A stretch of 64,000 nucleotides of DNA from Haliotis rubra (taxonomy: Eukaryota): NCBI RefSeq assembly GCF_003918875.1, contig NW_025765403.1, positions 1,426,001 through 1,490,000 on the forward strand. The letters are read 5' to 3'. The notes below the pieces were generated by a model. It was not told the origin of the DNA, ran no database searches, and saw nothing but the letters and a program-made list of their open reading frames with translations. Below are positions 32,684-35,600 of the stretch, in pieces. Within the stretch, counting starts at the first letter, position 1. Each line of letters starts with the position of its first letter. Position numbers and translations under genes: made by a program.

Positions 32684-35600
32684 ATGTCCACGTGTGATGT
32701 GGAAGAATCGGTTTGTGAAGTCAGTGATGCTTCCCATATCATGGTTGGACCAAAGAACACTCTCAATCACAGCCCATGTTCCATTGATGTGGACTGTGTT
32801 GCTGAGTCACCAGATGATTGCTCTGAATCTTCAGTGAATCCGTTGCTGGGTGAAAGCGCATCTTCCAAAGACACAGAGTGTATTGACATGATAGACAAGG
32901 TTCAGAACGACACTGAAATAATTATTGACGGTGCATGTTCCACACAGGAGAGCCACGCGCCCGCAGAGAGCTTGGATTTGGGAAGTGAGGCGTCTACCTG
33001 CGGGCTTGATGATGAGGATGAAGATGAGGATGATCAAGCTCAGGAGACTTCTAATGGAGGCAACCTTTCCGTGACCATGGTTGGACCGTCAAATACCCTT
33101 AATGTCATGCTACCTCACGTCAAAATCAGAAACGTCTGCATGAAAGGGAATACAAAAGTCAACATTAAGTACAACATTACTTCAGAACCCTCAACTGAAT
33201 GTGAGTACATTTCAGTCTTATATAACAGTTTTCCCAAAAAAATAATGTAACATATCATTATTTATACTATGAACTATTGTTGATTTTATTAGTGCAAAAC
33301 TTCAAATGTTGACGTACTCATGATGAAATGAAATTACTATTCATGTGGCTAAAGGGAAACACCCAAAGAAAGCCCGAATAACAGTTTTAGATGTGTTACT
33401 TTCACCACGGCTTTCTTCGTCAAGCATCCAAAATATTCATGGTGGACACACGCTCACTCATGTAACATTTCGATTTTTCATTTCAGCGCACAAAGAAAAA
33501 CGGAAGCTCAGGATAACTATAGATATGGAAGGCGATTCGTCGGCAATGGATGCCGTGTTTGCCAATTATCATCGCCCTAGGACAAGACTCAAACAAAATC
33601 TAGACAACCTTTTTGATCGGTTAAACTACGCCATTGACTTGATAACACCAGGGTCCATTGTAATAGAGTTACGACCAACAACGAGTAATTCTATTCATAC
33701 ACTGCTGGAATCAATTGAGAATGGACAGTTTGATAATATAGTCAAGGAACTATTAAGCGAAGAGTCTGTCTTCAAGATGATTGCTGGTAAAGAGGTTACT
33801 GTTACTGTTGACTTGAGCATTCCAGAGGAGCTGATCCAGAAGGCTGGGACATATCTCACCGATCCCATTCCTGTAGATCAGACTTGTGGATTGTTAGATG
33901 TGACTGTGAGAGTGCGAGAGGAGGGCAACGAGGGCATCCAGAAGGCTGGGACATCTCTCACCGATCCCATTCCTGTAGATAAGACTTGTGGATTGTCAGA
34001 TGTGACTGTGAGAGTGCGAGAGGAGGGCAACGGGGACAACGACAACAGCAGTCAATCTTCATCGGTTGATCCTTCAGATCCACAAGAGGTTGAAGAAGAT
34101 CTATCCTCCAGTGTTGACCCAGTATCATCAGCAGGTAGAATGACTGACTTATGATCTTTTCAATATATGATATTCATTTTATGATGGTTAAACATGATCA
34201 CTTAAATCATAACGATTTAAGGGAAAAAAAATCTGACTCAGTCATGTAGTTGTTATGTGGCTCTCGCTTTCTTTCATCTGTTCACTTTAGTTATTTATCA
34301 ATTTAGATTCCCAGGGTGGTGCAGCCTTCAGTATGTCACGTTCAAGGTAAAAAATACACAAATTCGAAAGTTTTCCAGTCTAGATAGTCATGGTCTACAA
34401 GTAGAAAATATCAATACTAAACATGGAATGATTCTTTTTACATTGTAATAAAAGAAAATGCTGTTTGGAGCCACGTCTCTGCCGGAATTCAATATTAAAT
34501 TAACTAATTGCTCACTCCTGAATCTGATAATACATTACATGGGCCATGCATCTCAAATTTTGTGTTTCAGCCAAATACATGGTAGACCAGGAAGGCTGAC
34601 TCTTTCTTCACTAAAGGGATTGCAGGACTGTGATCCATCAGTAATAATAACACGCATCAATCAGGACGTAAGAGGTTTTAAAACTATTTTGTCTAGAAAG
34701 GACCTGACGCCCAACGACTTTAAGCTGATTGTGTCTGTCCTGAGTAAAGCAGTTCATTGTGAATCAATGCCAGAGTGGATCAATGTCATTCTCAGTACAG
34801 TTGTTATTACCCCATTCTTTCGGACATCTTACACAAATGTTCTGTCACATCTGGACACTAATGATTCAAGACAAGTGACTTTGGAGAGTTTTCCAATCTT
34901 CAGAGAGATTTTGAAACGGATGCCATCTGAGGGATGGCCTGTTCTGAACACTGTTGCTCTGCTATCACGTGGCTTGATGGTAAGAAATGCCATAAAAGAT
35001 GTTGATGTCATTAAATGCGCAGAGGAATTGGATGAGCTTCTGCGGATAACTAAACCAGAAACACCTGAAATGAATGTGTCGACTGGCAGGCAGGACATGG
35101 ATGAGGATGAAGAGCTTGGAACACCACCAGAAAGCTTCCGTGAACTTCCAGTGATTCCGAGGAAGGAGGAACTCGATGGAACTGAGGAGATCTTCCTTCT
35201 GCGCAATAAAGTTGGAACTAGATTCAAAGATCTGGAACACTATCTTGAATGCCAGTTCCGCCTCTTCAGAGCTGATGTCATTATGCCTCTTAAGAAAAAC
35301 ATTCAAGCATTCAAAAGGGCCGACGCAGATACTTTTACAGACTATAGGACATATGCCGATGTACACATTTTGCGTCCTGTCTGTTCACCCAATGGTCTTT
35401 GCCACAGGCTCGCTTTTTCTACCAGACATCTGCAAAGGGTCAAATGGGAATCAAGTCAAAGATTGATCTATGGCTCCCTACTGTGTTTGTCATTAGATAA
35501 ATTCACTGACGTTGTCCTTTTTGCAACTGTTGACAGTCGAGATCCTGAAAGTCTAAAACAGGGATTGGTTGATGTGAGGTTTCTGTCAGATTTACCATAT

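What the first reader, a model, noticed from the sequence alone, without database searches (positions are those of the whole stretch)
33487..34571. TRADD-N-like domain spliced in frame to ZNFX1-3 through a 40-nt micro-exon
Seen: exon 33487-34134 encodes KLRITIDME...RLKQNLDNLFDRLNYAIDLITPGSIVIELRPTTSNSIHTLLESIENGQFDNIVKELLS...EVTVTVDL. Its phase-1 donor cannot join the phase-2 acceptor at 34570 directly, but a GT-AG micro-exon 34307-34346 (DSQGGAAFSMSRS) bridges the phases exactly. Known: GS(I/L)V(I/L)xL followed by a helix ending xG-hydrophobic is the pattern of TRADD-N-like domains in invertebrate immune proteins, and TRADD-N recruits TRAF2. Inference: links RNA sensing to TRAF signalling. 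The domain call is by eye.
Basis: partly seen in the sequence, partly recalled or inferred. Interest (0 to 1): 0.78.

Follow-up and report, generated by a model that had tools for sequence, protein, structure and literature searches.

The report
Adaptor-like domain fused to abalone ZNFX1
In this abalone genome one of four neighbouring copies of the RNA-sensing helicase gene ZNFX1 carries extra front exons, joined through a conserved 40-base micro-exon, that encode a small folded domain resembling the TRADD-N adaptor domain of cell-death signalling; the splicing is well supported, the domain name is plausible but unproven, and the link to TRAF is a guess.

Summary
Exon B (33487-34134), the 40-nt micro-exon (34307-34346) and the large ZNFX1 exon (from 34571) have the stated AG/GT borders and phases. 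NCBI protein models of the orthologues in Haliotis asinina (P0013) and H. rufescens (P0011) contain exon A, exon B, the micro-exon peptide and ZNFX1 in one protein. The micro-exon keeps its 40 nt and both splice sites in all three species.

The domain call is only partly supported. AlphaFold gives a beta-alpha-beta-beta-alpha-beta fold with both helices kinked and an invariant Gly-Ser in the beta2-beta3 turn. These are the published hallmarks of the TRADD-N superfamily. Human TRADD-N (1F3V) recurs in two Foldseek searches, but only at E about 0.03, among other ferredoxin-like folds. Pfam and PDB sequence searches find no TRADD.

The only relatives found are Haliotis proteins. About 170 residues are shared with 322-414-residue membrane proteins, one weakly ApoL-like. 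TRAF recruitment is untested.

In this assembly the large exon has three 1-nt homopolymer indels that break the frame, yet substitutions still show purifying selection. TRADD-N fusions to RNA helicases in marine invertebrates are already published, so this is at most a new member of a known kind.

The parts
32684..33200 (+). Exon A of ZNFX1-3. ATG at 32684. Mostly acidic, low-complexity sequence. Its last ~45 codons (about 33059-33199) form the N-terminal beta-rich part of the shared module.
   Evidence: Aligns to residues 1-160 of P0013 and 1-163 of P0011, starting at their Met. Donor GT at 33201. Its 3' part aligns with the N-termini of the Haliotis membrane proteins.
33487..34134 (+). Exon B: a TRADD-N-like (RRM-like) core domain followed by a Ser/Asp/Glu-rich linker.
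   Evidence: Splice sites and phases; translation; 68% and 64% identical to P0013 and P0011.
33507..33842 (+). Predicted folded core: b1, a1 (kinked), b2, Gly-Ser turn (33651-33656), b3, a2 (kinked at Gly, 33723-33725), short helix, b4.
   Evidence: AlphaFold2 model with mean pLDDT 73.9. G55, S56 and G79 are invariant in alignment A2. dN/dS is 0.19-0.22, the lowest of the N-terminal region.
33834..34032 (+). In-frame tandem duplication, 2 x 102 bp (34 residues), in the linker. The orthologue proteins have a single copy.
   Evidence: Tandem Repeats Finder: period 102, 96% match. Orthologue sequences.
34307..34346 (+). 40-nt micro-exon (peptide DSQGGAAFSMSRS-) that changes phase 1 to phase 2.
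   Evidence: AG/GT borders. Length and splice sites conserved in three species. The peptide is present in P0013 and P0011.
34571..39613 (+). Large exon C: ZNFX1 domain, SF1 helicase (AAA_11/AAA_12) and a Cys-rich zinc-finger region. It is interrupted in this assembly by three 1-nt indels, at the G run 35839-35842 (+1), the A run 36285-36290 (+1) and the A run 38732-38736 (-1).
   Evidence: Pfam PF25396 E 3.6e-29, AAA_12 E 7e-40, AAA_11 E 2e-13. It is one uninterrupted 1680-codon exon in L003 and L004. Indels located.
39875..40080 (+). Last exon (second half of the RZ-type zinc finger, then the stop codon).
   Evidence: Donor GT at 39614 and acceptor AG at 39873-39874. Aligns to P0013 residues 2030-2097. 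RZ finger in the orthologues, E 3e-12 to 1e-19.

Best explanation
The window comes from a Haliotis (abalone) genome and holds a tandem cluster of four ZNFX1 paralogues. The third, ZNFX1-3, is a five-exon gene: A 32684-33200, B 33487-34134, micro-exon 34307-34346, C 34571-39613, D 39875-40080.

Its front exons add about 400 residues ahead of the conserved ZNFX1 body:
- an acidic tail;
- a module of about 170 residues whose core is a small RRM-like alpha+beta domain of the TRADD-N type;
- a disordered Ser/acidic linker that includes the micro-exon.

Shown here: the exons are real, conserved, under purifying selection, and joined to ZNFX1 in orthologue models. The core is predicted to fold as beta-alpha-beta-beta-alpha-beta with a Gly-Ser beta2-beta3 turn. 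The same module heads a Haliotis family of small membrane proteins.

Inferred: the module is a protein-protein adaptor. When the helicase and zinc-finger body engages RNA, the module would couple it to downstream partners. These could be a TRAF-type MATH-domain protein, as for human TRADD, or other proteins that carry the same module.
For: - Organism and cluster.
- Splice chain.
- Constraint: domain dN/dS 0.19-0.22, against 0.33-0.45 in the linker and 0.50-0.59 in exon A.
- Fold: strands 7-14, 47-53, 57-63 and 104-110; helices 17-27/33-44 and 67-77/80-90. The same core appears in a second model built on the orthologue.
- The published TRADD-N definition (RRM-like sandwich, kinked helices, tiny-residue-Ser in the beta2-beta3 turn) is. 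G55-S56 and G79 are invariant.
- The published alignment shows 'GS' + 7-residue strand + 15 residues + 'G' in the DEDD2 clade. The window has the same spacing.
- 1F3V_A in Foldseek: rank 15, E 0.032, probability 0.91, TM 0.45; and rank 10, E 0.024, probability 0.97, the highest probability among the 50 matches listed.
- Published precedent for TRADD-N fused to Mov10, DDX60, RLR and SF1 helicases and to TM segments.
- Module shared with membrane proteins P0001, P0002, P0004-P0007 and P0033.
Against: - No statistically significant link to any known TRADD-N. Pfam gives nothing at E<=1 to 10. phmmer and a profile against PDB sequences do not find TRADD.
- No Foldseek match has E<=0.001, and other ferredoxin-like proteins score as well or better.
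- The models are of moderate confidence (pLDDT 74 and 65) and were built from shallow alignments of 7-9 sequences from one genus.
- No Death, DED or CARD domain accompanies the module, unlike most published invertebrate TRADD-N proteins.
- In this assembly the gene has three frame-breaking indels.
- Partner binding was not tested at all.
Confidence: 0.55

Rival explanations
1. The module is a Haliotis-specific RRM/ferredoxin-like domain that only resembles TRADD-N by convergence on a very common fold. The Gly-Ser turn would be a structural coincidence, and nothing about TRADD or TRAF would carry over.
For: All detectable relatives are from Haliotis. Foldseek places many unrelated ferredoxin-like proteins at equal or better E-values. 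Pfam and PDB sequence searches are blank for TRADD.
Against: Three specific published hallmarks coincide: both helices kinked, Gly-Ser exactly in the beta2-beta3 turn, and the same Ser-to-Gly spacing as the DEDD2 clade. The context, N-terminal to an immune RNA helicase and to TM proteins, parallels published TRADD-N architectures. 1F3V recurs in two searches made from different models.
Confidence: 0.3
2. ZNFX1-3 is a pseudogene in this species. The three indels would be real, so the fusion protein is not made here.
For: Three 1-nt indels relative to both orthologues leave the CDS with a net +1. The neighbouring copies at 8371-13284 and 51856-56970 have unbroken ORFs of 1637 and 1704 codons.
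Against: All three indels lie in homopolymer runs, which is typical of long-read consensus errors. No in-frame stop occurs within any of the four pieces. Window-lineage substitutions are 63 synonymous to 39 non-synonymous, no different from the H. asinina lineage at 94:68 (Fisher p 0.61) and far from neutral.
Confidence: 0.2
3. Exons A and B form a separate short transcript. With the intron retained after 34134, the protein would end 6 codons later. They would not be part of ZNFX1-3.
For: The open frame runs past the donor to a stop at 34152-34154. No RNA data could be examined for this species.
Against: Two independent orthologue models join them. The 40-nt micro-exon, with both splice sites, is conserved, which only makes sense as a phase bridge to exon C. 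An adaptor-only isoform could still exist alongside the fusion.
Confidence: 0.05

Closest known systems
DEDD2-clade TRADD-N domains fused to RNA helicases in marine invertebrates (Kaur et al. 2021, PMC8195603), e.g. Stylophora MOV10-like PFX25676.1, GT4+TRADDN-DEDD2+PNMA+zf-C2H2+SF1-helicase
   Same: A small domain with 'GS' followed by a hydrophobic strand and then a helix with a conserved Gly. It lies N-terminal to an SF1 (UPF1-like) RNA helicase in a lineage-specifically expanded immune gene family of a marine invertebrate.
   Different: The helicase here is ZNFX1, which is not named in the parts of the paper and its tables that could be searched (the main table was cut when stored). There is no accompanying DED, CARD or GT4 domain. 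Sequence similarity is too low for any tool here to detect. The module carries an extra beta-rich N-terminal extension.
N-terminal domain of human TRADD (PDB 1F3V, 1F2H; Pfam PF09034)
   Same: Predicted beta-alpha-beta-beta-alpha-beta sandwich with kinked helices and a Ser in the beta2-beta3 turn (Ser67 in TRADD contacts TRAF2). Foldseek probability 0.91-0.97.
   Different: E-values are only 0.02-0.03 and TM 0.37-0.45, with 12-13% identity. There is no Pfam match and no C-terminal Death domain. TRAF binding is unknown.
[quoted passage not shown]
   Same: ZNFX1 domain, AAA_11/AAA_12 helicase, Cys-rich fingers and a C-terminal RZ finger. Fish and lamprey ZNFX1 align over the body.
   Different: Vertebrate and most gastropod ZNFX1 proteins found here lack this N-terminal module: the homologues from Gigantopelta, Patella and an unnamed ENA protein start within about 40 residues of the exon C homology. 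The module is confined to the ZNFX1-3 orthologues of Haliotis.
TRADDN-DEDD2+TM architectures (amphioxus, corals) in Kaur et al. 2021
   Same: Adaptor domain followed by a membrane segment, as in the Haliotis 322-414-residue proteins that share the module.
   Different: The Haliotis proteins have a Gly/Ala-rich hydrophobic hairpin. One member gives a sub-threshold ApoL match (24.3 bits against a cut-off of 25.9). No homology to the published TM proteins was tested.

Membership tests
TRADD-N superfamily (sensu Kaur et al. 2021) | RRM-like two-layer alpha+beta sandwich, beta-alpha-beta-beta-alpha-beta, with a four-stranded sheet | tested here: met
   AlphaFold2: E7-14, H17-27/33-44, E47-53, E57-63, H67-77/80-90, E104-110. 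The second model has the same core. Confidence is moderate (pLDDT 74 and 65).
TRADD-N superfamily (sensu Kaur et al. 2021) | Both alpha-helices kinked | tested here: met
   DSSP breaks helix 1 at residues 28-32 and helix 2 at 78-79, the latter at the invariant Gly79.
TRADD-N superfamily (sensu Kaur et al. 2021) | Conserved tiny-residue-Ser motif in the beta2-beta3 turn | tested here: met
   G55-S56 (33651-33656) lies between strands 47-53 and 57-63 and is invariant in all 9 sequences of A2.
TRADD-N superfamily (sensu Kaur et al. 2021) | Significant sequence or profile similarity to established members (Pfam PF09034, 1F3V sequence, published alignment) | tested here: not met
   Pfam gives no hit at E<=1 to 10. 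phmmer and a profile against PDB give no TRADD. Only a by-eye match of spacing was possible.
TRADD-N superfamily (sensu Kaur et al. 2021) | Structural match to TRADD-N better than to other ferredoxin-like folds | tested here: inconclusive
   1F3V_A is at rank 15 (E 0.032, probability 0.91) and rank 10 (E 0.024, probability 0.97). No hit has E<=0.001.
TRADD-N superfamily (sensu Kaur et al. 2021) | Binding of a TRAF MATH domain through the exposed sheet | not testable with these tools
   No complex prediction or binding assay is available.
ZNFX1 helicases | ZNFX1 domain (PF25396) plus SF1 helicase AAA_11/AAA_12 | tested here: met
   E 3.6e-29, 2e-13 and 7e-40 on the pieces of exon C.
ZNFX1 helicases | C-terminal RZ-type zinc finger | tested here: met
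   Orthologues give E 3e-12 and 1e-19. In the window the finger is split by the last intron, so each piece alone is weak, but both pieces align to the orthologues.
ZNFX1 helicases | Uninterrupted coding sequence | tested here: not met
   Three 1-nt homopolymer indels in exon C of this assembly. The substitution pattern argues against long-standing decay.
Constitutive micro-exon | Conserved length, splice sites and reading frame; present in transcript-based models | tested here: met
   40 nt with AG and GT kept in three species. The peptide is present in P0013 and P0011. RNA-seq reads themselves were not available.

The most novel reading that the evidence does not exclude
The ~170-residue module is a self-associating or common-partner adaptor. 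It would wire an RNA sensor (ZNFX1-3) to membrane-inserting, ApoL-like death effectors that carry the same module. That would give abalone a sensor-to-pore-former antiviral suicide pathway built on a TRADD-N-type domain rather than a Death-fold domain.
Probability: 0.15. Interest if true: 0.7.

Novelty: new member of a known kind. Interest (0 to 1): 0.42.

Why it matters
ZNFX1 is a conserved antiviral RNA sensor, and its downstream wiring outside vertebrates is unknown. A ZNFX1 paralogue with an adaptor-type domain at its front end gives a concrete, testable handle on how a mollusc couples RNA sensing to signalling or cell death. The same module heads a family of small membrane proteins, which adds to that handle.

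It also extends the published pattern of TRADD-N domains shuffled onto RNA helicases in sessile marine animals to gastropods and to ZNFX1. The practical value is modest. The orthologue proteins are already in public databases, although nothing retrieved here, neither the precomputed Pfam lists nor the source names, annotates their N-terminal region. The domain identity still needs a proper profile or structural test.

Tried and rejected
- Pfam scans of exon B, of the orthologues and of every member of the family gave no TRADD_N or any other credible family for the module.
- phmmer of the domain against 1.84 billion representatives gave only two Haliotis proteins and one 11-fold internal repeat protein, P0003 (25% identity). 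I regard P0003 as a low-complexity artefact.
- Two word-based searches, one with a profile, added only further Haliotis membrane proteins.
- The profile against PDB sequences had as best hit the C-terminal domain of chloroplast ATP synthase delta/OSCP (E 0.0097, helix 2 to strand 4 only). I rejected this as a local chance similarity. It did not appear among the 50 Foldseek matches listed in either search.
- tblastn and an HMM of the module against the six-frame window showed that no other ZNFX1 copy in the window has it.
- The ApoL identity of the membrane proteins is weak: one of seven members, below Pfam's cut-off, and nothing in PDB.
- Literature search found no paper that holds both ZNFX1 and TRADD-N. 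The review of metazoan ZNFX1 by Blasi et al. 2022 is not held.
- Left out on purpose:
  - searching or folding the joined spliced protein of the window. Exons were searched one by one, and the orthologue protein P0013 served as a referenced proxy;

Full report
**Where the window comes from.** The window holds four ZNFX1-like genes in tandem on the + strand. Their large ORFs lie at 8371-13284, 20047-25353, about 34571-39613 and 51856-56970. The fourth copy is 90% identical to a Haliotis asinina protein and 85% to a H. rufescens protein over the 420 N-terminal residues searched. [quoted passage not shown] The window is therefore from an abalone that is neither of those two species.

**The observation.**
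- Exon A ends at 33200 (then GT) with one leftover base.
- Exon B starts at 33487, after AG at 33485-33486, and ends at 34134 (then GT), again with one leftover base.
- The segment 34307-34346 is flanked by AG and GT, is 40 nt long, and turns phase 1 into phase 2.
- Exon C starts at 34571, after AG at 34569-34570, and needs two bases from upstream.
- The exon B translation is as quoted.

A bridging segment alone means little. The 436-nt intron contains 33 stop-free AG..GT segments of the right length class.

**What decides the splice model.** Comparison with relatives settles it. A word search with the fourth copy returned P0013 (H. asinina, 2097 residues) and P0011 (H. rufescens, 2113 residues). 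These are the orthologues of the third copy. Exon A matches their residues 1-160 and 1-163, starting at the Met. Exon B matches 162-337 and 175-352. Exon C matches from 352 and 367. The 13-14 residues in between read DSQGGADFRMSRSS and DDQGGAAISVSSS, which is the micro-exon peptide.

In the genomic loci of both species (L003, L004) the micro-exon stands out as a conserved 40-nt block within a poorly conserved, indel-rich intron. AG and GT are kept on both sides. I could not examine RNA-seq reads, so transcript support is indirect, through the NCBI gene models.

The full model in the window is:
- A 32684-33200
- B 33487-34134
- micro-exon 34307-34346
- C 34571-39613
- D 39875-40080

Exons were handled one by one, and the referenced orthologue protein served as proxy.

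**State of the gene in this assembly.** In both orthologues exon C is one unbroken exon of 1680 codons. In the window it changes frame three times. A three-way DNA alignment places single-base differences in homopolymer runs:
- one extra G in the run 35839-35842;
- one extra A in 36285-36290;
- one base fewer at the A run 38732-38736.

The exon lengths sum to 6454 nt, one more than a multiple of three, as expected from +1 +1 -1.

None of the four pieces contains a stop. Substitutions unique to the window lineage are 63 synonymous to 39 non-synonymous. This is indistinguishable from the H. asinina lineage at 94:68 (Fisher p 0.61) and far from the roughly 1:3 expected without constraint. I therefore consider consensus errors in the assembly, or a very recent lesion, more likely than an old pseudogene. 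Only read-level data can settle this.

**What the front exons encode.**
- Pfam finds nothing in exon A or exon B at E<=1, nor in the N-terminal 350 residues of the orthologues.
- The rest of the protein is a standard ZNFX1: PF25396, AAA_11, AAA_12 and an RZ finger.
- phmmer of the first 121 residues of exon B against 1.84 billion representative proteins found only two credible relatives, both from Haliotis (P0001, P0002; E about 1e-7). A third hit is a repeat protein that I discount.
- Further searches added only their close kin in H. rufescens, H. rubra, H. cracherodii and H. asinina.

These relatives are proteins of 322-414 residues. They have the shared region at the front, then a charged helical stretch, a Gly/Ala-rich hydrophobic segment of about 45 residues, and a conserved C-terminal part. 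One member gives a sub-threshold ApoL match.

The shared region is longer than exon B. It begins in the last ~45 codons of exon A, with a V-G-x-x-N motif and a T-K-V-x-I strand, and spans about 170 residues. No other ZNFX1 copy in the window carries it. The core is the most constrained part of the N-terminal region: dN/dS is 0.19-0.22, against 0.33-0.45 for the linker and 0.50-0.59 for exon A. It is therefore a real, folded, selected domain.

**Is it TRADD-N?** The published definition (Kaur et al. 2021, PMC8195603) has three parts:
- an RRM-like two-layer sandwich with a four-stranded sheet;
- two kinked helices;
- a conserved tiny-residue-Ser motif in the beta2-beta3 turn, where Ser67 of human TRADD touches TRAF2.

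AlphaFold2 on a 7-sequence alignment (mean pLDDT 73.9) predicts strand 7-14, helix 17-27/33-44, strand 47-53, strand 57-63, helix 67-77/80-90, a short helix and strand 104-110. That is the required topology with both helices broken. The Gly55-Ser56 pair sits exactly in the beta2-beta3 turn. Gly55, Ser56 and Gly79 (at the break of helix 2) are invariant across both Haliotis families. A second model, built on the orthologue and including the exon A part, gave the same core plus low-confidence extra strands (pLDDT 65; only one of five models was usable).

In the paper's own alignment DEDD2-clade members read 'GS', a 7-residue hydrophobic strand, 15 residues of helix, then a conserved Gly. The window reads GS-IVIELRP-(15 residues)-G with identical spacing and a similar hydrophobic pattern.

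Foldseek against the PDB returned only ferredoxin-like folds, and none at E<=0.001. Human TRADD-N (1F3V_A) appeared in both searches:
- rank 15, E 0.032, probability 0.91, TM 0.45;
- rank 10, E 0.024, probability 0.97, the highest of the 50 matches listed.

Sequence searches against PDB chains did not find TRADD. The best profile hit was a local match to ATP synthase delta/OSCP (E 0.0097), which I treat as chance.

In sum, three structural hallmarks are met, the significance tests are not, and the structural ranking is suggestive but inconclusive. I put the TRADD-N assignment at roughly 55-60%. The main alternative is a lineage-specific RRM-like domain.

**How it probably works.**
- Shown: the architecture. 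It runs acidic tail, module of about 170 residues, Ser/acidic linker (with a window-specific in-frame 102-bp duplication) plus the micro-exon, then the ZNFX1 body.
- Established for relatives (my background knowledge, not tested here): vertebrate ZNFX1 senses viral double-stranded RNA.
- Established for relatives: TRADD-N of human TRADD docks the MATH domain of TRAF2.
- Published proposal: invertebrate TRADD-N domains are proposed to act as adaptor switches next to RNA receptors and effectors.
- Inferred for this gene: the module is the output adaptor of this ZNFX1 paralogue.

TRAF is one candidate partner, but nothing here tests it. The same module also heads membrane proteins with a possible pore-forming region. 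An equally reasonable reading is therefore that sensor and effector meet through this module, directly or through a common partner.

**Novelty.** TRADD-N fusions to Mov10, DDX60, RLR-like and other SF1 helicases, and to TM segments, are already described for cnidarians, brachiopods, sponges and amphioxus. ZNFX1 is not named among them in the text and tables that could be searched, and the largest table is truncated in the held copy. No held paper mentions both ZNFX1 and TRADD-N. The orthologue proteins are public, but nothing retrieved here annotates their N-terminal region. This is a new member of a known kind, of moderate interest.

**Limits.** The alignments behind the models are shallow and come from one genus.

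Noticed in passing
window 35839-35842, 36285-36290, 38732-38736: Three single-base homopolymer length differences break the frame of the large ZNFX1-3 exon relative to both orthologues. The substitution pattern still shows purifying selection, so assembly error is suspected.
   Followed up: yes
window 33834-34032: In-frame tandem duplication of 102 bp (34 residues, 96% identical copies) in the linker after the domain. The orthologues in H. 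asinina and H. rufescens have one copy.
   Followed up: partly
window 32684-33200 (exon A); also P0002 residues 1-60: A short motif M-V-G-P-(K/S)-N-T-L-N occurs twice in exon A. A related V-G-x-x-N motif opens the Haliotis membrane proteins. The shared module therefore starts before exon B.
   Followed up: partly
P0001, P0002, P0004-P0007, P0033 (loci L001, L002): A Haliotis-only family of 322-414-residue proteins carries the same N-terminal module, followed by a Gly/Ala-rich hydrophobic hairpin. One member matches Pfam ApoL just below threshold.
   Followed up: partly
window 24954-26123 versus 20047-25353: In the second ZNFX1 copy the homology to its relatives moves from frame 1 to frame 3 near 24950-25000, while the frame-1 ORF runs on to 25353. 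This may be another frameshift or a short intron. H. rufescens P0010 matches the fourth copy over residues 30-1721 but matches this C-terminal region over residues 1810-2191.
   Followed up: no
window 20047-21160 and 8371-8760: The N-terminal extensions of the ZNFX1 copies differ: about 370 residues in copy 2, about 120 in copy 1 and almost none in copy 4. None has a Pfam match, and none carries the module of copy 3.
   Followed up: partly
window 40136-43858: Directly downstream of ZNFX1-3 lie large, strongly C-over-G-skewed satellite arrays: a 28-bp unit x 65 at 40679-42466, a 52/199-bp unit at 42676-43210, and a 120-bp unit x 3 at 43498-43858.
   Followed up: no
window 30352-31318: A CA/ACAT-rich microsatellite-like tract about 1.4 kb upstream of the ZNFX1-3 start codon. 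It produces long spurious ORFs on both strands.
   Followed up: no
window 7044-7203 and 46556-46714: Two runs of N (160 and 159 bases). They were left as they are.
   Followed up: no
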